Positions 9,271 to 54,085 of a stretch of 64,000 nt of DNA are shown here, one piece after another. Numbering within the stretch: position 1 is the stretch's first letter; each line of letters begins with the position of its first letter. Both the position numbers and the translations under genes were made by a program. The notes beneath the pieces are model-generated. The model was given only the letters and a program-made list of their open reading frames with translations, ran no database searches and was not told the origin of the DNA. The DNA is from Octopus sinensis (lineage: Eukaryota): NCBI RefSeq assembly GCF_006345805.1, contig NC_043000.1:138694001-138758000 (forward strand). The letters are read 5' to 3'.

Positions 9271-9702
<432 letters not shown>

Positions 9703-19585: not shown

Positions 19586-19617
<32 letters not shown>

Positions 19618-19632
19618 TTATTTGTATGTATA

Positions 19633-19680
<48 letters not shown>

Positions 19681-19788
19681 TTATTTGTATGTATATATAT
19701 GTGTGTGTGTATATATATATATATATATTATTTATTTGTATGTATATATATGTATATATATATATATTATTTGTATGTATATATATGT

Positions 19789-19819
<31 letters not shown>

Positions 19820-19881
19820 GTATATATACATATATATACATACAAATAAATAAATATATATATATATATATATACAAACAA

Positions 19882-19914
<33 letters not shown>

Positions 19915-19940
19915 ATATATTTTATTTGTATGTATATATA

Positions 19941-19984
<44 letters not shown>

Positions 19985-20053
19985 TGTATATATATATATA
20001 TTATTTATTTATTTGTATGTATATATATGTATATATATATATATATATGTATA

Positions 20054-20101
<48 letters not shown>
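19586..20101. repeat. Complex (TA)-rich VNTR, unit about 55-65 bp with tatttatttgtatg marker, containing an inverted segment
   Basis: Marker repeated about 6 times on +; reverse-complement marker at about 19829-19885. Confidence 0.9.
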
Positions 20102-22246: not shown

Positions 22247-22293
<47 letters not shown>

Positions 22294-22741
22294 ATAGTAA
22301 ATAAAGTAATAAAAATAAATTATTATTACCAGTGACTGGTAATAATAATTTATTTTTATTACCCTATTTACTATGTTTAAATATTGCTCGATAAATTTGC
22401 TCGTAAATTTTTTACCGGCATCCTCTCTGTCACCGGGTATGATTTGCGTCTGCGCACTGGTATGAAAAGTTAGGCTATACAGATCGTTAGATTTGCACAT
22501 GCTTCTAACGTACTTCTAACGTAATCTTGGATTACAAAGGCTTCCTGCTGATGATTCTGGCCTTGGCAGATAAATTCTATTCATTTGCTAAAAAAAAGAT
22601 GAAACCGCGGTACAGGATTAGCTGAGTTGGTAAACGTTTTTGATTTTCATTCCATTTCATGAATTTATCCCCTTTTTGTGTATCTAGCACTCGCTTCTTT
22701 ATTTGGAAGCCCTTTAATGTATACATATAAATATATATATA

Positions 22742-25746: not shown

Positions 25747-26660
25747 TCATCATCATCATCTTTTAATGTCTATTTTCCATGTTGGCATGAGTTGGACAGC
25801 TTGATTGTGGTCTGGGGAGCCGGGGGGTCACCAGGCTCCAGTCTGATCTGGCAGTGTTTCTACAGCTGGATGCCCTTCCTAACGCCAACCACTCTAAGAG
25901 TGTAGTGGGTACTTTTTATGTGCCACTGGCACAGGAACCAGTTAGGTGGACTTGGCATTGATCATATTTGGATGGTGCTTTTTATGCGCCACCAGCACAA
26001 CAGTCAGTCAGTGGGTACAAGCATTGGCTATATTTAGATGGTGCATTTTATGTGCTACTGGCATGGGAGCCAGTTAGGTGGACTGGCTCCCATACCGGTG
26101 GCACATATATATATGTATGTATGTATGACATGTATGTTCGGATGGTGCTTTTACATACCACTGGCACGGGAGCCAGTTAGGTGGACTGGCTCCCATACCG
26201 GTGGCACATATATATGTATGTATGACATGTATGTTCGGATGGTGCTTTTACATACCACTGGCATGGGAGCCAGTTAGGTGGACTGGCTCCCATACCGGTG
26301 GCACATATATATATGTATGTATGTATGACATGTATGTTCGGATGGTGCTTTTACATACCACTGGCACGGGAGCCAGTTAGGTGGACTGGCTCCCATACCG
26401 GTGGCACATATATATGTATGTATGACATGTATGTTCGGATGGTGCTTTTACATACCACTGGCATGGGAGCCAGTTAGGTGGACTGGCTCCCATACCGGTG
26501 GCACATATATATGTATGTATGACATGTATGTTCGGATGGTGCTTTTACATACCACTGGCACGGGAGCCAGTCAGGAGGCACTGGCTACAGCTACAATATT
26601 GGTTTTACTTTACTCAACAGGTCTTCTCAAGCATATCGTATTGCCTGATGCATCAGGATA
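25747..26660 (-). mobile_element. RTE LINE 3' UTR fragment containing an expanded tandem array
   Basis: Begins (CAT)n-tttaatgtctattttccatg on +; homologous to 46994-47577. Confidence 0.8.
26037..26571. repeat. Tandem array of 5.4 hairpin-containing units (97-104 bp)
   Basis: Unit starts at 26037, 26141, 26238, 26341, 26438 and 26535; each full unit has gggagccagt-taggtgg-actggctccc. Confidence 0.95.
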
Positions 26661-31307: not shown

Positions 31308-31510
31308 ATCATCATCATCGTTTAACATCCGCTTTCCATGCTAGCATGTGTTGGATGGTTCAACTGGGGTCTGGGAAGCCCAAAGGCTGCACCAGGCCCA
31401 GTCTAATCTGGCAGTGTTTCTACAGCTGGATGCCCTTCCTAACACCAACCACTCCATGAGTGTAGTAGGTGCTTTTTATGTGCCACTGACACAGGTGCCA
31501 GACGAGGCTC
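31308..31510 (-). mobile_element. RTE LINE 3' UTR fragment
   Basis: (CAT)n-cgtttaacatccgctttccatgctagcatg...ggatgcccttcctaac. Confidence 0.85.
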
Positions 31511-31821: not shown

Positions 31822-32051
31822 GTTAGAGACTAGTACTCCAATCCACACCTGAATGAGGCTGGCATGTTTGCAAAAGTACAACTTCATTTGTTCTATAGCA
31901 AGCACCACACCTGTTGTTTAACAAATATTAAAGGAGGAAAATTTTTGTGCTTAACTAATCCTGAAAATATCTGTAGAATATATTTATCATAAGCCTATAC
32001 TTCAAACCACACATCTATGATGCTTTAGCTACTGTTATATATATATTCCAG

Positions 32052-32810
32052 CTGATTTTATGAACTATTTAGATTTACAAATGTCTATGACTGTAAGGTT
32101 TTAATGTAAAACACTTACTTACTGCTAGTTAAGAATTATATTTTTGCTGAGATTAATAATAATCTTTATCATGTCTTTTGTATTTCCATACATTATTGTC
32201 TTAAATTCTTCCACCCCACTGCAATATCTAATATTTTCTGCCTTATTTTAGCATTATACATTTAATTAAAGTAAATGAAATTACACTATCTACTTCTGTA
32301 TAAACAATTTTCAAAGTGAAATGCTGATTAATTGCAAGAAAAGAAAATAAGTGACATTGATAAGATTTCAAATTGAACTTTTAAAACATATGTGATTTCA
32401 TTCAGTCTCTTCATTTTGAGCAAAGCAATTGTATTGGTAAAAAATATATATATTTTAATTAAAAACTAATGTTAAATAACTATATTGATTATTTTAAAGG
32501 TTTCACCTCTTTATCTCCATTCATGTAACATATTTTGTAGACTACTTCAGAAAAGACTTTAAAATTGAAGACAATTCACCATCCTATTCTTCAAATATCT
32601 TGAAAAGAATTGTATGTGGAGGTGGAAGGATATAATTTCATAAGAATTCTGAAAGAAAATAATTATTCATTTACTTTTGGAAAATAGGAGATTCTATTGT
32701 TTAGTGATAGTCTGTTTTAATTTATAGTTGTTTATATCTTTGGAAATGATAAGTCATGTTTTCTTCATTTATTTACAGACCAATTATCCTCACATTGAAT
32801 ATATTTGAAG
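32052..32810 (+). CDS. Candidate small exons 32052-32092, 32406-32436, 32541-32611 and 32779-32810 (stop at 32806-32808)
   Basis: AG/GT-bounded and phase-consistent with the 27.7-28.0 kb exons: S-DFMNYLDLQMSMT|SLHFEQSNCI-D-YFRKDFKIEDNSPSYSSNILKRI|TNYPHIEYI*. No homolog recognised. Confidence 0.3.
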
Positions 32811-34245
32811 GTATGTAATCATTCAAAAATGTATTTATTCTGTGACTTTAGCACAATGTCCATTTATTAGTAATACTGAAGATGTTTTTAATTAGATTTT
32901 AAGCCTGGAATATTTTCGATGATTTTAGGAGACAAGAGTGCATGGTTAATAAGTTTGCTGTGTAAGAATTTGATTCCAGACTCAATTCCACTCCATGACT
33001 CTTAATATAGTCTTGAGCTGACCAATAACTTGTGAGTGGAATTCAGTCGATGGAATTGAGCAGAAGTTCGATCAAAATAGTGGTTTTGTCTCAAATAATA
33101 TTTTATATATATATATATATATATACATACATATATGCATATATTATGGCTGCCCCCTTGTTATCGAGTATGGCCATTGCACGAAGCTTAACTGTTACTG
33201 GTGCTGTGATCGAATGTGACTTTTTTTAGCCCAGCTAAAGATCTACAATGTCTTGTACAAAATTGGCAACTAAGACCTTTACTGGTAATAGCCAGCTGTA
33301 GTTGTAACTGGGCTTCATGTACTTTTGCATGCCGTTTAAGTCCACCTGCCGAATTACACTCTCTTCCACATGCCCGACAGATATGATTAGTATGGTGTGT
33401 TGCACCACCCCCAGTGGCCAAGTTGTCACTCATCTGTCTCGTTTTATGACGACGAAGATGACTCATGAGTCCAGCTTTACTGAGGCAGGGTCTTGCACAG
33501 ACATTGCATGACAGAATCAAAGGAAGACCCTTCCCTTCTGGAAGTGTAACAGCGATGCCCTTCCTGACATCCCTCCTTACTTTCTCATGTGCAACTCGAG
33601 ATTTCTCAAACGTGGCTGTCCCCTCATTCACAATCCTTCTCCACCTGCTACGATCAATAGCTATGCCTATTGATCGTAGCAGATATACGTACACACATTC
33701 ATACATACACACATATCTTTTTAACAATTTTGCATTAATAGTTTTATCATTAGAGTTCTCATTAAGGTGGCAAGCTGGCAGATTTGTTATTGTGGTAGGT
33801 AAAATGCATAGTGGTATTTCGTCTGGCTTTACATTCTGGAACCAAATACTGCTGAAGTCGACTTTGCCTTCTATCCTTCTGGGGTCAATAAAATAAACAT
33901 CAGTTGCTCACTGGGGTCGATGTAATCGACATTTTGCAATAAATTTAATTCAACAATTCAACATTCTTACACAGCAAACTTATTAACCATGCACTCTTGT
34001 CTCCTAAAAATCATCGAACATATTCCAGGCTTAAAATCTAATTAAAAACATCTTCAGTATTACTAATAAATGGACATTGTGCTAAAGTCACAGAATAAAT
34101 ACATTTTTGAATGATTACATACCTTCAAATATATTCAATGTGAGGATAATTGGTCTGTAAATAAATGAAGAAAACATGACTTATCATTTCCAAAGATATA
34201 AACAACTATAAATTAAAACAGACTATCACTAAACAATAGAATCTC
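32688..34245. repeat. Near-perfect inverted duplication, arms 32688-32969 and 33963-34245
   Basis: 282/283-bp arms; I counted one substitution and one 1-bp indel. Confidence 0.95.
33145..33672 (-). mobile_element. RTE-clade LINE 3' fragment with three C2H2 zinc fingers (second RTE type)
   Basis: DRSRWRRIVNEGTATFE...CNVCARPCLSKAGLMSHLRRH...CRACGRECNSAGGLKRHAKVH...CQFCTRHCRSLAGLK(frameshift)SHIRSQH; tail tggccatactcgataac. Confidence 0.85.
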
Positions 34246-34285
34246 TCAAAATTACTGGTCTTGTGCCAAAATTTGAATATTATTG
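33765..34285 (+). mobile_element. SINE family B variant interrupted at 33931-34245 by the inverted duplication
   Basis: Head and core run to gtcgatgtaatcgac (33930); a probable tail caaaattactggtcttgtgccaaaatttgaa resumes at about 34246. The tail assignment is from recalled consensus. Confidence 0.65.
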
Positions 34286-34519
34286 GAGTTCTACTTTTTA
34301 ATATATTCTCTCCTAAGGAAGGGCATCATAGTTTTTGCTTGAAGCATTGGGATATTATTAACTGAAATAAGGTAGAAAGCTTCACAAAATGTGAAAGAAA
34401 GAATTAAGAATTTATCAATTCCTTATATTTTGGGTGATGCATCCACATTCAGAGGCTTGCCTTAACTATACTTGGACAACCACTAATATTCAATACTTTT
34501 TTGACTGCTGTTCTTTTTA

Positions 34520-34722
34520 TTAGGCTGGTGCATAATTTTTGTGGCTTTTTTGCAATAAATTTAATTCAACAAAAAATTTAAACAAAATGCCAAGCATTAA
34601 TTGAAGTATATGGTGATTATGTTCCGGAATAATCATTCAAAGGTATTTCCGTAACACGTTGTTATAGTTTCTGCTGAATAAAACTTACTGAAAAAAAGTA
34701 CAATAATTATGCACCAACCAAA
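34520..34722. mobile_element. Mariner-derived MITE (MADE1-like TIR)
   Basis: ttaggctggtgcataatt / aattatgcaccaaccaaa with TA on both sides. Confidence 0.8.
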
Positions 34723-34909
34723 TAGATGGGTGAACCACCTGAAATATAAAACATTATAAAATTACTAATTCTTTCTTAGTATTGTAAAAAGTTCCCTATT
34801 TTACTATATTATATTTTGTGTATATATATAAAATATATATATATATATATATATATTTATACACACACACATCATCATCATCCTCATTGTCATCGTCGTT
34901 TAAAGTCTG

Positions 34910-34948
<39 letters not shown>

Positions 34949-34997
34949 CAGAATTTAGTATGGTTTTAGCCATACAATTTCAAAGTATGGTGATTAA

Positions 34998-35318
34998 AAT
35001 CAAAATAAGCAACAAGGATATCCAGAGGTAATGCAGTATAACTGTTTCATGCAACTCCATTTAATTGAACAATGCAGTCATTACATCAATTCAAAATGCA
35101 GAGCAATCCTCAGCTGCAAAAAGACACAGAATTTAATTATATTAGAACAGATGGACACATCAGTATAATTATACCTAAAATGTTGTCTCTGTCTTTGTGC
35201 AGCTGAGGATTGGTCTGCATTTTTAATTTATGTAATGATTGCATTGTTCAATTAAATGGAGTTGCATGCAACGATCGTACTGTATTACCTATGGTAATCC
35301 TTGTTGCTTATTTTGATT
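34998..35318. repeat. Foldback element with about 130-bp inverted arms (partial end also at about 23102-23123)
   Basis: Arms 34998-35130 and 35188-35318 (aatcaaaataagcaacaagga.../...tccttgttgcttattttgatt). Confidence 0.85.
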
Positions 35319-35320
35319 AT

Positions 35321-35353
<33 letters not shown>

Positions 35354-35451
35354 GTTAATAAATTTTAGGGTAGCAAAAAATTCTAGAAAAATTCTCCACT
35401 ACCAGCGGTCAAGTGAGAAAGAAAAGATAGTTAATAGACTATATAATATAC

Positions 35452-35733
35452 ATTCAAATATATGAGGAATGGCCATAATAGGACATTCGACTCACTAGAA
35501 AGAGCAGCCAAACTCCAAACCACTAATAGTTGTAATTCTGAAATGGAAAGAGAAATAAAAACTTTACCCTCTCCTTTCTGGACTATGCATAGTTTCGGCA
35601 GTCTTTAGTAAATAAATTAATTAAATTTATTTCTCTTTCCATTTCAGAATTACAACTATTAGTGGTTTGGGGTTTGGCTGCTCTTTTTAGTGAGTCGAAT
35701 GTCCTATTATGGCCATTCCTTATATATTTGAAT
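35452..35733. repeat. Near-perfect hairpin, 108-bp arms with 66-bp loop
   Basis: Arms 35452-35559 and 35626-35733; 3 differences. Confidence 0.92.
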
Positions 35734-37201
35734 ATATATATATATATTGGCCATTCCTTATATATTTGAATATATATATATATTCATAAACCACAATGTG
35801 TTCACTCTGCAAATATTAATATCTGGCCTGAACAATTATACCAGCTTTGTACCATTGTACCATTATGAAAACAATCTGTAACATTCAGAATTATGCTTAC
35901 ATTGCTAAAGAGTAGTTTTATACCATTCACCATTTGCAGCTTGAAAGGAAGGGTTTTAAGGAAGATAAAACTCCTCTGTTAGATTCTTGTTCAAAGCATT
36001 GCAAGACTTTTGCCTTAACTATAGGGTTAAATTTCACAGAAAATTATCTACATATCTATTAAATAGGGCATGCCGGGAATGATCAGTCCGAGATGTATCG
36101 TTAATGGTAAATGTTTTTGATTTTCACTCTCGATAAATTTATCTATAAATTTATCCCTTTTTTTGTGCCCCTAGCACTTGGCATCCTTATTTAGGAGCCC
36201 TTAATTATATTTCTATATGAATAATATTTTTCTGTATGAATAATATTTTGTCTAATGACTAATTCGTCTTTTGTGCTGGGCCACTGGTAGTAATCTATAT
36301 TATTACCCTTTGTTTATATCTATTAAATATATGGATATAATTCTGTGTATTTATTTATGGTATTTACATTCTTCTGGCTGGAAAAGTAACCATTTCTTTC
36401 GTCTTCCATCAATATTGTACTCACTTTGTCGACAGCAAGAGAAAGGAAACAACAACAAGAATGTTTAACTGTAAAGCTATATCATGTATGAGTATTATTT
36501 ACCATTGTAAGAAGTAGGCAGGTGGCATATAAGTGATGAATGCTATCTTAAACTTCAGTCAAATGATGGAGAGAAATAATAATTGTATCAGTGTGTCTTC
36601 AGAATGAGTACATAAAAAGTGAAACCTTTAATAATATCAAGAACACTTCGATGAGGAGCAGGTACAGAAATCATAAGATAAGTTCAAGAACATAATCTTC
36701 AAAAGATGCTTTTGTATTGATAAACTAAAATGGTGTTGGTTTTGTTTGGCTTCAGGTCATCTTCCATTGACGAGACCAATGATCAAAGATATTCCAGCTG
36801 TTACCATGTAACCATACTATTCTCATTCTCAAATGTAAAACTACATCATTCAACATGTTATTTTATTTTTTAAGACTTGGATATTAAGAACATTTCAAAG
36901 CTATTTTTGTCAATTTAATCAACCACAGTGAAGGTGATCATAATTGATTTGTTCCAGCACTCTATGTTGTCATGTATGAGTCAAAGAGTTAGTTAGAGGA
37001 TATTTTAACTTAAGGTAGAAAGAATGGTTGTTCAGGAACGATTGGTCTTGTTTATATAGATTTAGTTTTAATTTAACCTCCTATTTTATTTCCTTGCTCT
37101 CAGTTCTTCTGTCTGCATCTGATAACTAAATTATAGTAAAATTAACCCAAAGATGATATTCGTATTCCATAATTCAAATATCTAAGTGATATCTAAGTGA
37201 T

Positions 37202-42289: not shown

Positions 42290-43330
42290 AAATATTATCT
42301 TTAAGCTTCAACAGATCCAATTAAGTGAACTAAGTCATTCACATGCAGTATTTCTCTGCTCTCTCCTGTTTAGAATAGTTCTCCAGGCTGTAGCAAAAGA
42401 CTTGGTATGGCCTGGAGAACCATTGTAAACAGGAGGGAGCAGAGAACCAAGCCCCGATGAACACCTATCTAAATACAAGAATTCTTCAGTAGACATCCTA
42501 TTAACTATCACTTAAGATAATTTTTGAATATGGTTTTCATAGCTCAAACGACTATTCATCTACACATAGTTTTCTTGGTGGCCATCAGACTACTGAGCAA
42601 GGTACTCAATGAAAGGCCTTCTCTAAGTTGACAGAATCTAAACACATGTTTCTTTATTACCCGCAAGGGGATAAACATAGAGGGGACAAACAAGGACAGA
42701 CAAACGGATCAAGTCGATTATATCGACCCCAGTGCATAACTGGTACTTAATTTATCGACCCTGAAAGGATGAAAGGCAAAGTCGACCTCGACAGAATCTA
42801 AACATAGTGAAGTGTTCTATACTAAGAACTTATGTAGATGTGTAACTCAGAAATGAACATTTTTATTACCTCCATCCTGGTACAAATCAACTAGATTTTG
42901 TAGAACTTTCTGTTACATTCCGAATTTGGCCAATCCCTTTGATGCTTCAGGAACTACTTCCTTCAAGAGTATCTCCTTCGCTCTTGCAGAAGTTAACAAT
43001 ATTACTGCACTGTTGAGGATGAAACCACCCTGCAATTCCAAAGAAGAAATCTCTATCTGATTCTTCGAAAGGCAATAAACTGCAGCCAAATTTTTCTCAA
43101 ATACTACATTTCTGTCAAATATTGTTGAATATACAAGGTAAGCTAAAGTTGAATATAATATACCACGAAAGACTGCAAAAGTTCATGGCAAGAAAACAGG
43201 TCAAATGTTATGACACAAGTTGAAATATTTATCGTAACATGTTTGAATGAAATCAGAGAATGACAATAGTTATGAATCTGCTTCAAGTTGAATCTAAAGA
43301 ACCTATAAAGGTATCTTACAAAGTCTTTAG
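42290..43330 (-). mobile_element. Highly decayed RTE reverse transcriptase relic
   Basis: Mosaic frames give SNIVNFCKSEGDTLE (cf. IIVNCYKGKGDAL), FVPG and VNLEKAFH*VP, with many stops. Boundaries are approximate. Confidence 0.7.
42645..42789 (-). mobile_element. 5'-truncated SINE family B inserted in the RT relic
   Basis: 15-bp TSD gacagaatctaaaca at 42630-42644 and 42790-42804. Confidence 0.9.
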
Positions 43331-45312: not shown

Positions 45313-45954
45313 ATATATATATATGTTATATGTTATGTGTATGTACATGGGAGGGTGGATATGCATGTATGTGTTTGTGGGTGTATGTGAGTGCATTTAT
45401 TGTGTATGTCCCTATTGCTAGAATAGGTATTGCTAAGAGCATTTTTAAGCCAGCCCGTCAAGTTCAACCTTCGCATATTCGCCGTGTCAGGCCGAAAAAC
45501 GAAATGTTTCCAAGATAAGAAAATCTTTCTAATCTAATTCATCCCGTAATCTGTACCAGTAATATTCTCATGCAAATTTGTCTGATCTCTAGTGGTTAAG
45601 CTGTTTATTATTATTAGTATTAGTATTATCCCTTTGACCCCCAGTCGACAATTTGCAGCCCGTCAAGTTCAACCTTCGCATATTCCCGGTGCACCCGCCC
45701 TTGCCCACCCCCACCACCAATACCGGATATCTCTATATTTTTGCTCCATCTATACCGGATGTCGCTTCTCCCACCACCATTATAGGTGTCTACTCTTCGA
45801 ACCCCCCTCTTCAATACGCTATTTCACCATGCATTACCCCTCTCATGATATCCTACGTTCTACTTGTCTAGAACCTGTCATCATTTCTCCGAACACCCCT
45901 CCCCACTGGTGTTCCCCTATATTTCTGCACCCTCCCCCCACATAAAAAGCACCA

Positions 45955-46252
45955 TCCGAACGTGGCCGATGCCAGCACCACCCCGACTGGCTTCTGTGCA
46001 GGTGGCACATAAAAAGCACCAACTGACCGTGGCCGATGCCAGACCCCTCTGGCACCTGTGCAGGTGGCACGTAAAAAGCACCCACTACACTCGCGGAGTG
46101 GTTGGCGTTAGGAAGGGCATCCAGCTGTAGAAACACTGCCAGACCAGACTGGAGCCTGGGGCAGCCCCTGGCTCCCCAGACCCCGGTCGAAACCGTCCAA
46201 CCCGTGCTAGCGCGGAAAACGGACGTTAAACGATGATGATGATGATGATGAT
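45955..46252 (+). mobile_element. RTE LINE 3' UTR fragment
   Basis: Two VNTR units, gttggcgttaggaagggcatccagc, (GAT)n tail. Confidence 0.9.
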
Positions 46253-46775: not shown

Positions 46776-48577
46776 ACTCTTTTACTCTTTTACTTGTTTC
46801 AGTCCTTTGACTGCGGCCATGCTGGAGCACCGCCTTTAATCGAGCAACTCGACCCCGGGACTTATTCTTTTGTAAGCCCAGTACTTATTCTATCGGTCTC
46901 TTTTGCCGAACCGCTAAGTAACGGGGACATAAACACACCAGCATCGGTTGTCAAGCAATGCTAGGGGGACTAACACAGACACACAAACACACACACACAC
47001 ATATCATCATCATCATCATCATCATCGTTTAACGTCCGCTTTCCATGCTAGCATGGGTTGGACGGTTCAACTGGGGTCTGGCAAGCCCGAAGGCTGTACC
47101 AGGCCCAGTCTGATCTAGCAGTGTTTCTACAGCTGGATGCCCTTCCTAACGCCAACCACTCCGAGAGTGTAGTGGGTGATTTTATGTGCCACCGACACAG
47201 GTGCCAGACGAGGCTGGCAGACGGCCACGCTCGGATGGTGTTTTCTTATGTGTCACCGACACAAGTGCCAGACGAGGCTGGCGGACGGCCACGCTCGGAT
47301 GGTGTTTGTTACGTGCCCTCAGCACGGAGGCCAGTCATTGCGGTACTGGCTACGGTCACATTCAGATGGTTTTCTTATGTGCCACCGGCACTGGTACCAC
47401 AAGGATACAAATTCCATTGATGTTCATCTATTTTGATTTGGTTCGATTTGATTTGATTTGATTTGATTTGATTCGATTCTCACTTGCCTCAACAGGTCTT
47501 CACAAGTGTTACAAGAAGGAAGGTATGCACAGGTGGACTGACTACGTCCCAGGTAGGGGCCACGGGTTATGGCTTCACTAGTCTTGCCTGGTCTTCTCAC
47601 GCACAGCATACTTCCATAGGTCTCGGTCTCTAGTCATTTCCATGGTGAGACCTAACATCCGAAGGTCGTGCTTCACCACCTCGTCCCAGGTTTTCCTGGG
47701 TCTACCTCTTCCACGGGTTCCCTCAACTGCTAGGGATTGGCACTTTCTCACACACCTATCTTCATCCATTCTCGCCACATGACCATACCAGCGCAATCGT
47801 CTCTCTTGCACACCACAACTGATGCTTCTTAGGTACAACATTTCTCTCAAGGTACTAACGCTCTGTCGAGTAAGTACACTGACATTACACATCCATCGGA
47901 GCATACTGGCTTCGTTCCTCACGAGCTTACGCATGTCCTCAGCAGTCACGGCCCATGTTTCACTGCCATGTAGCATAGCTGTTCGTACACATGCATCATA
48001 CAGTCTGCCTTTTACTCTGAGCGAGAGGCCTTTAGTCACCAGCAGAGGTAAGAGCTCCCTAAACTTTGCCCAGGCTATTCTTATTCTAGCAGTTACACTT
48101 TCAGTGCACCCCCCCCCACTACTGACTTGGTCACCTAGATAGCGGAAGCTATCAACTACTTCTAGTTTTTCCCCCCGGAAAGTGAGGAAGTTGTTTTCTG
48201 CAGATTTTCGGAGGTCAATGCTCCAGAGCATCTGCCACATACAAAAACTATCTTCCCAGTTAGCCTACCTTTGACATTGCTGCACCTCTTATGTGTCCAT
48301 AGCTTACACTGGGTACATCTTATAGAGTTTCTACCTACACCTTTTCTACAGATCGAGCAGGGCCATCTTCCTGAGGATATTTGTGGATTGTCTACCTTTC
48401 TACTATACATATATACAACGGGCTTCTTTCAGTTTCGTCTACCAAATCCACTCACAAGGCATTGGTTGGCCCGAGGCTATAGCAGAAGACACTTGCCCAA
48501 GGTGCCACGCAGTGGGACTGAACTCGGAACCATGTGATTGGTAAACAAGCTACTTACCACACAGCCACTCCTGTGCC
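46776..48577 (-). mobile_element. SINE family A split by an RTE insertion (halves 46776-46992 and 48403-48577)
   Basis: The 3' half and 5' half flank the RTE exactly at the central microsatellite. Confidence 0.85.
46994..48402 (-). mobile_element. Young 5'-truncated RTE LINE: ORF2 C-terminal part with PHD-like Cys finger, one frameshift, full 3' UTR and (GAT)n tail
   Basis: RWPCSICRKGVGRNSIRCTQCKLWTHKRC...CGRC / EVVDSFRYLGDQV...YDACVRTAMLHGSETW...RRLRWYGHVARM...RGRGRPRKTW (ORFs 48162-48410 and 47578-48240). Confidence 0.95.
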
Positions 48578-48789
48578 ATTTCATTATATAGATTCAACAA
48601 AATAATTATGGTTGCAGTTAAATATAAATCTCATAAAACATCATAAAAAATGCAACCGCAATTACACACCAGAAATAGCAAACTCACCTCAACTAGAGCC
48701 CACCTCAAATACAATACACTGAAACCATACACAGCTAAAACTAAACTCCTCAAGATATTAATAAACATATAAATAATAAATAACATATC

Positions 48790-49246
48790 GACTGGCCTCC
48801 CTGCCGGTGGCATGTAAAAAGCACCATCCGATTGTGGCCATTGCCAGCCTCGCCTGGCCCCCATGCCAGTGGCATGTAAAAAGCACCATCCGATTGCGGC
48901 CATTGCCAGCCCCGCCTAGCCTCCCTGCCGGTGGCACGTAAAAAGCACCATCCGATTGTAGCCATTGCCAGCCTCACCTGGCCCCCGTGCCAGTGGCACG
49001 TAAAAAGCACCATCCGACCGTGGCCGTTTGCCAGCCCACTCTGGCACCTGTGCTGGTGGCACGTAAAATGCACCCACTACACTCACGGAGTGGTTGGCGT
49101 TAGGAAGGGCATCCAGCCGTAGAAACATTGCCAGATCAGACTGGGTCTGGTGCAGCCTTCTGGCTTCCCAGACCCCAGTTGAACCATCCAACCCATGCCA
49201 GCATGGAAAGCGGACGCTAAATGATGATGATGATGATGATGATGAT
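48790..49246 (+). mobile_element. RTE LINE 3' UTR fragment with about four 60-bp VNTR units
   Basis: Repeated ggtggcacgtaaaaagcaccatccga; (GAT)n tail. Confidence 0.9.
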
Positions 49247-53614: not shown

Positions 53615-54085
53615 ATCATCATCATCATCATCATCACTTAACACCCGCTTTCCATGCTAACATGGGTAGGACGATTTGACTGAGGACTAGCGAACCAGAT
53701 GGCTGCACCAGGCTCCAATCTGATCAGGCAGAGTTTCTACGGCTGGATGCCCTTCCTAATGCCAATCACTCCGAGAGTGTAGTGGGTGCTTTTACGTTCC
53801 ACTGGCACAAGGGCCAGTCTGGCGGTACTGGCAATGGCCACACTCAAATGGTGTTTTTTACGTGCCACCTGCACAGGAGTCAGTCCAGCGGCACTGGCAA
53901 CGACCTCACTCAAATGTTTTGTTCATGTGCCACTGGCACAAGTGCCAGTAAGGCAATACTGGTAATGATCATGCTCAAATGGTACCTCTTATGTGCCACC
54001 GGCATGGAAGCCAGACTGCTGCTTTGGCAGTGAACCCGCTCAGATGGAGCTGTTTGCAGTCCACTGGCATAGGTGCCAGTCATCG
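53615..54085 (-). mobile_element. RTE LINE 3' UTR fragment
   Basis: (CAT)n tail and about four VNTR units. Confidence 0.85.

What the first reader, a model, noticed from the sequence alone, without database searches (positions are those of the whole stretch)
32688..34245. Inverted templated duplication creates a near-perfect antisense copy of a candidate exon and both splice sites
Seen in sequence: 32688-32969 is repeated in reverse at 33963-34245 (about 99% identical). The duplicated segment contains the acceptor tract, the 32-nt exon candidate 32779-32810 (antisense copy at 34123-34154) and its gtatgt donor. Established: long intramolecular dsRNA is an ADAR substrate, coleoid cephalopods edit RNA extensively, and intronic complementary sequences can mask splice sites. 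Inference: a recent birth of an editing-complementary or exon-skipping element. A 282-bp stem with a 1-kb loop would cover the exon, its branch region and the stop codon.
Basis: partly seen in the sequence, partly recalled or inferred. Interest (0 to 1): 0.7.

Follow-up and report, generated by a model that had tools for sequence, protein, structure and literature searches.

The report
Recent inverted duplication in octopus DNA
A 282-base stretch of non-coding, repeat-rich octopus DNA was recently copied backwards about 1 kb away, most likely by error-prone break repair; nothing shows it contains an exon or has a function, so it is a real but ordinary structural mutation.

Summary
32688-32969 and 33963-34245 are reverse complements with one mismatch and one 1-nt indel, 993 nt apart. 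They are the most similar of 246 repeat pairs in the window. The arms are not transposon ends. The left arm is 239 nt of single-copy DNA plus the first 43-47 nt of an old SINE that continues unbroken into the spacer. The right arm carries only that SINE head, inverted. It abuts a 3'-truncated second SINE, a 25-nt exact copy of a MITE segment 590 bp downstream, and a 6-nt stutter. There is no target-site duplication. This fits a recent break-repair event: either a templated inverted insertion or a micro-inversion with a staggered break. An assembly artefact cannot be excluded without reads. The exon reading is unsupported. Equally good acceptor/donor/open-frame combinations occur 2-3 times per strand here and 2.35 times in shuffles. 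No non-repeated ORF of at least 45 aa in the window, and no arm reading-frame segment of at least 18 aa, matches any protein in a 5.8-billion-protein database. About 20 other inverted-repeat pairs lie in the same 64 kb. If transcribed, the locus would fold into a 282-bp dsRNA, a generic ADAR/Dicer substrate. Transcription could not be tested.

The parts
32688..32969 (+). Left arm of the inverted duplication (homology continues weakly to 32973)
   Evidence: It has no other copy in the window or in 34 kb of O. vulgaris DNA. A weak 59.6% match to L001 is noise: 17 of 100 shuffles do as well.
32688..32926 (+). Single-copy, non-coding part of the left arm. It is contiguous with a 1.2-kb non-repeated block starting at 31510.
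   Evidence: no protein match for arm reading-frame segments of at least 18 aa
32779..32810 (+).
   Evidence: such pairs occur 2 (+) and 3 (-) times in the window vs 2.35 in shuffles; the frames read TNYPHIEYI*, PIILTLNIFE, QLSSH*IYLK
32927..33158 (+). Old tRNA-like SINE copy ('SINE2'). Its 5' end lies inside the left arm and its body runs on into the spacer, including its (TA)n stretch at 33095-33147.
   Evidence: family alignment. A family profile gives one nhmmer hit at 32927-33158, E 7.3e-13, with high posterior probability across 32969|32970.
33142..33724 (-). Fragment of an interspersed repeat carrying an ORF with C2H2-like zinc fingers (33188-33727, 179 aa), probably the tail of a retroelement
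   Evidence: 84-91% identical to L001 9704-10330. P0001 of O. vulgaris is 87% identical over 29% of the ORF. The Pfam zf-C2H2_4 hit is below cutoff. 'Retroelement' is my inference.
33764..33932 (+). Second SINE ('SINE1'): 5' end intact, about 65 nt of the family's 3' end missing, which marks a breakpoint at about 33930
   Evidence: alignment with six other copies. nhmmer matches profile positions 8-176 of 273, E 1.7e-36. The missing 3' part is not found anywhere in 32000-35000.
33932..33956 (+). 25-nt piece, 100% identical to 34548-34572 (an internal segment of the neighbouring MITE)
   Evidence: (D7)
33957..33962 (+). 6-nt filler TTCAAC, a direct repeat of the TTCAAC that ends two bases (AA) upstream
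   Evidence: read directly from the junction printout
33963..34245 (-). Right arm: reverse-complement copy of the left arm, including only the first 43-47 nt of that specific SINE2 copy
   Evidence: The SINE-head part is 100% complementary to the left copy (I3), although that SINE is only about 65-70% like its family consensus.
34521..34726 (.). TA-flanked palindromic MITE-like element (ends TTAGGCTGGTGCATAAT... / ...ATTATGCACCAACCAAA), which holds the sequence matched by the 25-nt piece at 34548-34572
   Evidence: The resemblance to mariner-type MITE ends is from memory and was not tested.

Best explanation
This is a recent, local inverted duplication made by faulty repair or replication, lying in repeat-rich non-coding octopus DNA with no demonstrable function. 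A segment of about 283-288 bp (239 nt of single-copy DNA plus the head of an old SINE) now exists twice in opposite orientation, 1 kb apart. Two known routes give exactly this picture. (a) Templated insertion or template switching: a broken or stalled 3' end near 33930 copied 25 nt from the MITE about 590 bp downstream, stuttered by 6 nt, copied about 285 nt of the opposite strand about 1 kb upstream, and was then rejoined at 34246. In this case the left arm is the parent. (b) A 1.3-kb micro-inversion in which one break was staggered by about 282 nt and filled in. This leaves the staggered stretch at both ends in inverted orientation, with short filler at the new junction 33930-33962. Shown: the structure, the youth of the copy, the single-copy nature of the arms, the SINE running through the left inner junction, the patchwork at the right inner junction, and the absence of a target-site duplication. 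Inferred: the repair mechanism, and neutrality. If a transcript crosses both arms, it would fold into a 282-bp near-perfect dsRNA and be edited by ADAR or diced, as any such hairpin would be. That would be a by-product, not evidence of a role.
For: Arms are 98.96-99.3% identical and are the most similar repeat pair in the window. The arms have no further copy in the window or in L001. A SINE family profile matches 32927-33158 as one hit running through the arm/spacer boundary. The arm end is therefore an arbitrary point inside an older element, as expected for a duplication breakpoint and not for a transposon terminus. The right arm holds the same diverged SINE head at 100% identity (I3), so it is a copy of this locus and not a separate SINE insertion. 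The right inner junction is a patchwork: SINE1 lacks about 65 nt of its 3' end, followed by 1 nt, a 25-nt exact copy of 34548-34572, and a 6-nt stutter. The 10 bases outside the two arms (TGGAAAATAG / TCAAAATTAC) agree at only 6 of 10 positions, so there is no target-site duplication (flanks). Both mechanisms are documented: template switching creates reverse-complement copies and hairpins (PMC5453318, PMC8794818, PMC10710096), and staggered breaks leave inverted duplications of non-repetitive sequence at inversion breakpoints (PMC1885836).
Against: No reads, second assembly or sister-species locus could be obtained, so an assembly artefact is not excluded and routes (a) and (b) cannot be told apart. 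The 25-nt match could instead be the remnant of an independent MITE copy. Microhomology at the junctions cannot be judged without the ancestral sequence. High arm identity could also reflect gene conversion between older arms rather than youth. Uniqueness of the arms was tested against only about 98 kb of octopus DNA.
Confidence: 0.72

Rival explanations
1. Assembly artefact: the second, inverted arm was created by a chimeric read or a mis-join and does not exist in the animal.
For: Only one assembly was seen. One of the two differences between the arms is a homopolymer-length change (T4/T5), typical of long-read error. The region is full of repeats that confuse assemblers (43% of the window is repeated within 98 kb).
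Against: Foldback chimeras of long reads give palindromes with no spacer or only an adapter-sized one, not a 993-nt non-palindromic spacer. The arm ends lie in sequence that is unique or uniquely diverged (an old SINE copy about 65-70% like its consensus), so no shared k-mer is available for a mis-join. The window has no gaps. The arms also differ by a true substitution.
Confidence: 0.13
2. One reading: a newborn editing-complementary or exon-masking element. The right arm pairs in the pre-mRNA with a real 32-nt exon and its splice sites, causing ADAR editing or exon skipping.
For: If transcribed on one strand, the stem would form: 281 of 282 arm bases pair and the arm duplex energy is -453.8 kcal/mol. 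[quoted passage not shown]
Against: Nothing marks 32779-32810 as an exon. Equally good acceptor/donor/open-frame pairs occur at the shuffled-sequence rate, and two of its three frames hit a stop. No non-repeated ORF of at least 45 aa anywhere in the window, and no arm reading-frame segment of at least 18 aa, matches any known protein. There are no Rfam or tRNA hits. The arm is otherwise AT-rich single-copy DNA ending in a SINE head.
Confidence: 0.03
3. A DNA transposon or foldback element with 282-bp terminal inverted repeats, spanning 32688-34245.
For: It has long inverted ends around a 1-kb interior, and the neighbourhood holds three MITE-like palindromes.
Against: There is no target-site duplication (6 of 10 flanking bases agree). 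The inner 43-47 nt of the 'terminal repeat' is the head of a SINE that continues into the interior on the left side only. The interior is a mosaic of truncated unrelated repeats. No other copy was found in 98 kb.
Confidence: 0.02
4. The duplication is real and also produces a long hairpin RNA that is processed, either hyper-edited by ADAR or diced into endo-siRNAs as in Drosophila hpRNA genes (my knowledge of that system). It would have some effect on the host transcript or on a target elsewhere. This concerns function and is compatible with the best explanation of origin.
For: The hairpin is strong, and the literature links such structures to hyper-editing in octopus (PMC5625713).
Against: There is no evidence of transcription. 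The arm shows no similarity to any protein-coding sequence that could be a target. About 20 other inverted-repeat pairs lie in the same 64 kb, so it would be one dsRNA source among many.
Confidence: 0.07

Closest known systems
Template-switch mutations and FoSTeS/MMBIR-type templated insertions (Ripley model; four-point model, PMC5453318; hairpin and miRNA birth, PMC8794818, PMC10710096)
   Same: A reverse-complement copy of nearby sequence is written into the DNA. This creates a perfect inverted repeat de novo that would give an RNA hairpin. The junction carries further short, locally templated pieces.
   Different: From my reading of that work, the short-range events it describes involve tens of bases and adjacent sites. 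PMC5453318 states explicitly that its model does not attempt long-range or multiple successive switches. Here the copy is about 285 nt, lies 1 kb from its source, and needs at least two switches. It therefore sits between the short events and the kb-to-Mb FoSTeS/MMBIR rearrangements.
Inverted duplications at inversion breakpoints from staggered breaks (Drosophila, PMC1885836)
   Same: Ancestrally unique, non-repetitive sequence is duplicated in inverted orientation at the two ends of a segment, with no transposon involved. The two arms plus spacer have exactly that layout.
   Different: The segment here would be a 1.3-kb micro-inversion rather than a chromosomal inversion. Inversion of the spacer cannot be shown without an outgroup.
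Neighbouring inverted SINE/Alu pairs as ADAR hyper-editing substrates (PMC5625713)
   Same: If transcribed, it would form a long, nearly perfect intramolecular dsRNA within 2 kb, the class of structure in which hyper-editing concentrates. Octopus is one of the two most hyper-edited species in that survey.
   Different: The arms are not two independent repeat insertions. They are one mostly single-copy segment duplicated in place, and at 99% they are far more perfect than the SINE pairs in this window (66-93%).
Intronic editing-complementary sequences, for example at the GluA2 Q/R site (my knowledge)
   Same: An intronic inverted copy pairs with an exon and its splice site.
   Different: Known examples pair with a proven, conserved exon through a short imperfect stem. 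Here no exon is supported, the stem is 282 bp, and conservation is unknown.
Drosophila hpRNA (hairpin endo-siRNA) genes (my knowledge)
   Same: These are young inverted duplications with arms of a few hundred bp that fold into long hairpins.
   Different: hpRNA arms derive from, and target, protein-coding genes and yield abundant siRNAs. This arm has no coding similarity, and small RNAs could not be examined.

Membership tests
Break-repair / template-switch inverted duplication | A reverse-complement copy of nearby, otherwise unique sequence | tested here: met
   99% inverted copy 1 kb away, and no other copy in 98 kb
Break-repair / template-switch inverted duplication | Copy boundaries fall at arbitrary points, with one copy retained in its original context | tested here: met
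   an old SINE runs through the left inner boundary, and the right arm carries only its first 43-47 nt
Break-repair / template-switch inverted duplication | New junctions show filler, stutter, microhomology or extra templated snippets, and no target-site duplication | tested here: inconclusive
   a truncated SINE, a 25-nt exact local copy and a 6-nt stutter at 33930-33962, with no target-site duplication. Without the ancestral sequence, microhomology and the origin of the 25-mer remain inferred.
Break-repair / template-switch inverted duplication | Absent from the ancestral or orthologous allele | not testable with these tools
   No cephalopod genome can be searched by DNA. The protein route gave only a paralogous O. 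vulgaris locus, and two further look-ups found nothing.
TIR DNA transposon / foldback element | Target-site duplication flanking the terminal repeats | tested here: not met
   The flanks TGGAAAATAG / TCAAAATTAC agree at 6 of 10 positions, and no shorter exact duplication lies at the ends.
TIR DNA transposon / foldback element | Terminal repeats belong to the element and are found in multiple genomic copies | tested here: not met
   The inner part of the arm is a SINE head that continues into the interior on one side only. No other copy was seen in 98 kb, though that sample is small.
Editing-complementary / exon-masking intronic hairpin | The paired partner is a genuine exon | tested here: not met
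   the motif occurs at chance frequency and one frame of three is open; no protein match. A micro-exon cannot be formally excluded without RNA data.
Editing-complementary / exon-masking intronic hairpin | Both arms transcribed on one RNA, with A-to-G editing or altered splicing observed | not testable with these tools
   No RNA-seq access
hpRNA / endo-siRNA locus | A long, near-perfect hairpin | tested here: met
   281 of 282 arm bases paired, MFE -709.6 kcal/mol for 1558 nt
hpRNA / endo-siRNA locus | Arms homologous to a target gene; siRNAs produced | tested here: not met
   no arm reading-frame segment of at least 18 aa matches any protein. siRNA production is not testable.
Inverted SINE pair (Alu-like dsRNA source) | The two arms are independent insertions of one repeat family | tested here: not met
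   239 of 282 nt are single-copy. The SINE part is identical between the arms although the SINE itself is old.

The most novel reading that the evidence does not exclude
A few-hundred-bp template switch or micro-inversion has just created, from junk DNA, a transcribed perfect 282-bp hairpin in an octopus intron or non-coding RNA. The hairpin is hyper-edited or diced and is polymorphic in the population. This would be a snapshot of the first step in the de novo birth of a structured RNA locus, in the animal group with the most active RNA editing.
Probability: 0.05. Interest if true: 0.55.

Novelty: new member of a known kind. Interest (0 to 1): 0.2.

Why it matters
On its own it matters little. 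It is one more small structural mutation in a genome region that is at least 43% repeats. Its value is as a clean example. The old SINE crossing one junction and the patchwork at the other make the origin of a long, perfect inverted repeat readable from the sequence alone. It also shows how single-copy DNA, not only transposon pairs, can become a dsRNA-forming locus. If population or RNA data later show that it is polymorphic and transcribed, it could serve as a natural test of what a brand-new 282-bp dsRNA does in an octopus transcript. The claim that it regulates an exon should not be carried forward.

Tried and rejected
1. Transposon with long terminal repeats. Rejected: no target-site duplication, a SINE crosses the left inner boundary, and the interior is a mosaic.
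2. Arms as members of a repeat family. There is no second copy in the window or in L001. The one weak hit (59.6% over 203 nt) is matched by 17 of 100 shuffled arms.
3. Coding exons. Two composite protein searches covered all non-repeated ORFs of at least 45 aa in the window plus the arm-region reading-frame segments of at least 18 aa. Both found nothing. Pfam on the spacer ORF and on other repeat-derived ORFs gave only sub-threshold hits. One chance match (E 0.079) of a LINE-like ORF to a toxin-subunit family was disregarded as noise.
4. Structured RNA genes. No tRNA and no Rfam family reached threshold in the window.
5. Finding the same locus elsewhere. The spacer ORF led only to a paralogous repeat copy in O. 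vulgaris. Exact look-ups of two window ORFs found nothing. A 28-mer from the arm has no match in metagenome contigs.
6. Looking for the missing 3' end of SINE1 next to the right arm, which would have favoured the insertion route over the inversion route. It was not found.
7. LINE 3' transduction or twin priming as the source of the copy. Considered and dropped, because the right arm is not accompanied by the LINE-like fragment or by the intervening sequence.

Full report
**Observation.** The repeat finder reports two inverted-repeat blocks offset by one base: 32688-32926 with 34007-34245, and 32923-32969 with 33963-34009. I aligned 32688-32969 globally against the reverse complement of 33963-34245. 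The result is 282 vs 283 nt with one substitution (32914 T; partner 34019 C on the + strand) and one length difference in a T/A run. BLAST carries the match to 32973/33958 (288 columns, 98.96%, E 7e-143). The spacer is 993 nt and the window contains no N. Of 246 repeat pairs of at least 100 nt in the window, this pair is the most similar. The next best is 95.7% and the median is 86%.

**Organism and setting.** The spacer ORF finds a single protein, an unnamed Octopus vulgaris model that is 87% identical over part of the ORF. The O. vulgaris locus encoding it (L001, OX597815.1 around 81.02 Mb) shares SINEs and other repeats with the window at 70-92% identity. The window is therefore octopod DNA. 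At least 43% of it has another copy within only 98 kb of sampled sequence. It holds long microsatellites and tandem arrays, and it has no tRNA or Rfam match.

**What the arms are.** Neither arm has any further copy in the window or in L001. One weak hit is noise, since 17 of 100 shuffled arms do as well.

The key result came from aligning the abundant tRNA-like SINE family whose copies match 32993-33110. The family's 5' end (GGCACAGGAGTGG...) aligns to 32927, which lies inside the left arm. A profile built from ten other copies matches 32927-33158 as one hit (E 7.3e-13). That hit has high posterior probability straight across the arm/spacer boundary at 32969|32970.

The left arm is therefore 239 nt of single-copy DNA plus the first 43-47 nt of an old SINE, about 65-70% like its consensus, which continues into the spacer. 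The right arm contains only that head, inverted, and it is 100% complementary to the left copy (I3). It is thus a copy of this particular locus and not a second SINE insertion. An arm that ends at an arbitrary point inside an older element is what a duplication breakpoint looks like, not a transposon terminus. The ten bases outside the two arms agree at only 6 of 10 positions, so there is no target-site duplication (flanks).

**The spacer and the right inner junction.** After the SINE body and its (TA)n, the spacer holds three things.
- A minus-strand fragment of an interspersed repeat (33142-33724). It is 84-91% identical to L001 9704-10330. Its ORF has C2H2-like fingers that score below the Pfam cutoffs.
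- A second SINE (33764-33932). Its 5' end is intact but it lacks about 65 nt of the family's 3' end. Retrotransposition does not truncate a SINE at its 3' end, so 33930 is a breakpoint.
- A junction patch: one base, then 25 nt identical to 34548-34572, then TTCAAC, which repeats the TTCAAC that ends two bases (AA) upstream, and then the right arm.

The 25-nt match lies inside a TA-flanked MITE-like palindrome at 34521-34726.

**Mechanism.** Two documented routes fit the structure.
- (a) Replicative template switching, or polymerase-driven templated insertion at a break. This would give a short direct copy from 590 bp downstream, a stutter, then about 285 nt copied from the opposite strand 1 kb upstream, followed by rejoining at 34246. 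Template switching is known to write reverse-complement copies and create hairpins (PMC5453318, PMC8794818, PMC10710096). The modelled events are short-range single switch-and-return events, and PMC5453318 does not attempt long-range or multiple successive switches.
- (b) A 1.3-kb micro-inversion with one break staggered by about 282 nt and filled in. This leaves inverted duplications of unique sequence at both ends, as proposed for 17 of 29 Drosophila inversions (PMC1885836).

In (a) the new junctions are the right inner and right outer ones. In (b) they are the left outer and right inner ones. SINE continuity across the left inner junction and the patchwork at the right inner junction fit both routes. 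I looked for the missing SINE1 3' end beside the right arm, which would have favoured (a), and did not find it. Only an outgroup can decide between them.

The arms differ by 0.35% in substitutions. The event is therefore recent, or else the arms are kept alike by gene conversion.

**Artefact.** I cannot exclude a mis-assembly without reads. Several points argue against it:
- the spacer is long and is not palindromic;
- the arm ends lie in unique or uniquely diverged sequence;
- the contig has no gaps;
- the arms differ by a true substitution.
I put this rival at about 0.13.

**The exon and editing reading.** The motif cag|ACC...AAG|gtatgt at 32779-32810 is real. I counted acceptor/donor pairs of the same quality, 15-300 nt apart, with at least one open frame. 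There are 2 on the + strand and 3 on the - strand of the window, against a mean of 2.35 (range 0-5) in block-shuffled sequence. Only one frame of the candidate is open.

Two composite queries covered every non-repeated ORF of at least 45 aa in the whole window plus the arm-region (32600-33000) reading-frame segments of at least 18 aa. Neither found a protein at E<=0.01 among 5.8 billion proteins. These results give no evidence for coding exons anywhere in these 64 kb, although they cannot exclude a micro-exon.

As RNA, 32688-34245 would fold with 281 of 282 left-arm bases paired to the right arm (MFE -709.6 kcal/mol). Octopus has a very high rate of hyper-editing in such structures (PMC5625713). 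So the statement 'if transcribed it would be an ADAR substrate' is sound. It applies equally, though less perfectly, to about 20 other inverted-repeat pairs in this window.

**Verdict.** This is a genuine, young inverted duplication of ordinary non-coding DNA made by break repair. It is a new instance of a known kind of mutation, with no supported function. The exon, splice-masking and editing-element half does not. Interest is low (0.2).

Noticed in passing
window 34521-34726, 34995-35321, 35440-35746: Three MITE-like palindromic elements lie within 1.5 kb to the right of the feature, with self-complementarity of 68%, 81-88% and 84%. The first is TA-flanked, with ends resembling mariner-type MITEs (from memory). 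The last about 35 nt of the third are repeated in tandem at 35741-35775.
   Followed up: partly
whole window: About 20 distinct inverted-repeat pairs of at least 80 nt lie within 3 kb of each other (66-93% identity). Most are pairs of the two SINE families, so potential dsRNA-forming structures occur roughly every 3 kb.
   Followed up: partly
window 26037-26586; 45939-46086, 47182-47307, 48788-49074, 53790-53949: There is a tandem array with units of 97/200 nt (5.5 copies, 93-96%). Related 62-67-nt tandem units lie in a GC-richer block (44-47% GC) around a LINE-like ORF at 47578-48240(-). These may be the internal tandem repeats of one retroelement family.
   Followed up: no
window 9271-9702 and 19586-20101: Two very long microsatellites are present: (TGA) x 144 and (AT) x 261. 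The first produces spurious poly-D, poly-I and poly-M ORFs of up to 192 aa.
   Followed up: no
L001 10001-24102 (O. vulgaris OX597815.1): The annotated 104-aa gene model P0001 ('---NA---') spans 14 kb and begins in the same zinc-finger-bearing repeat family as the spacer ORF. It is probably a repeat-derived gene model. A nuclear-receptor gene (zf-C4 + Hormone_recep) lies 3 kb downstream on the other strand.
   Followed up: no
window 22284-22384 and 42352-42446: Two short self-complementary palindromes (101 nt at 93%, and 95 nt at 82%) are not associated with an identified repeat family.
   Followed up: no
window 33645-33682: A 38-nt palindrome (89%), 'ctacgatcaatagctatgcctattgatcgtag', sits inside the zinc-finger repeat fragment at the point where similarity to the L001 copy weakens.
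   Followed up: no
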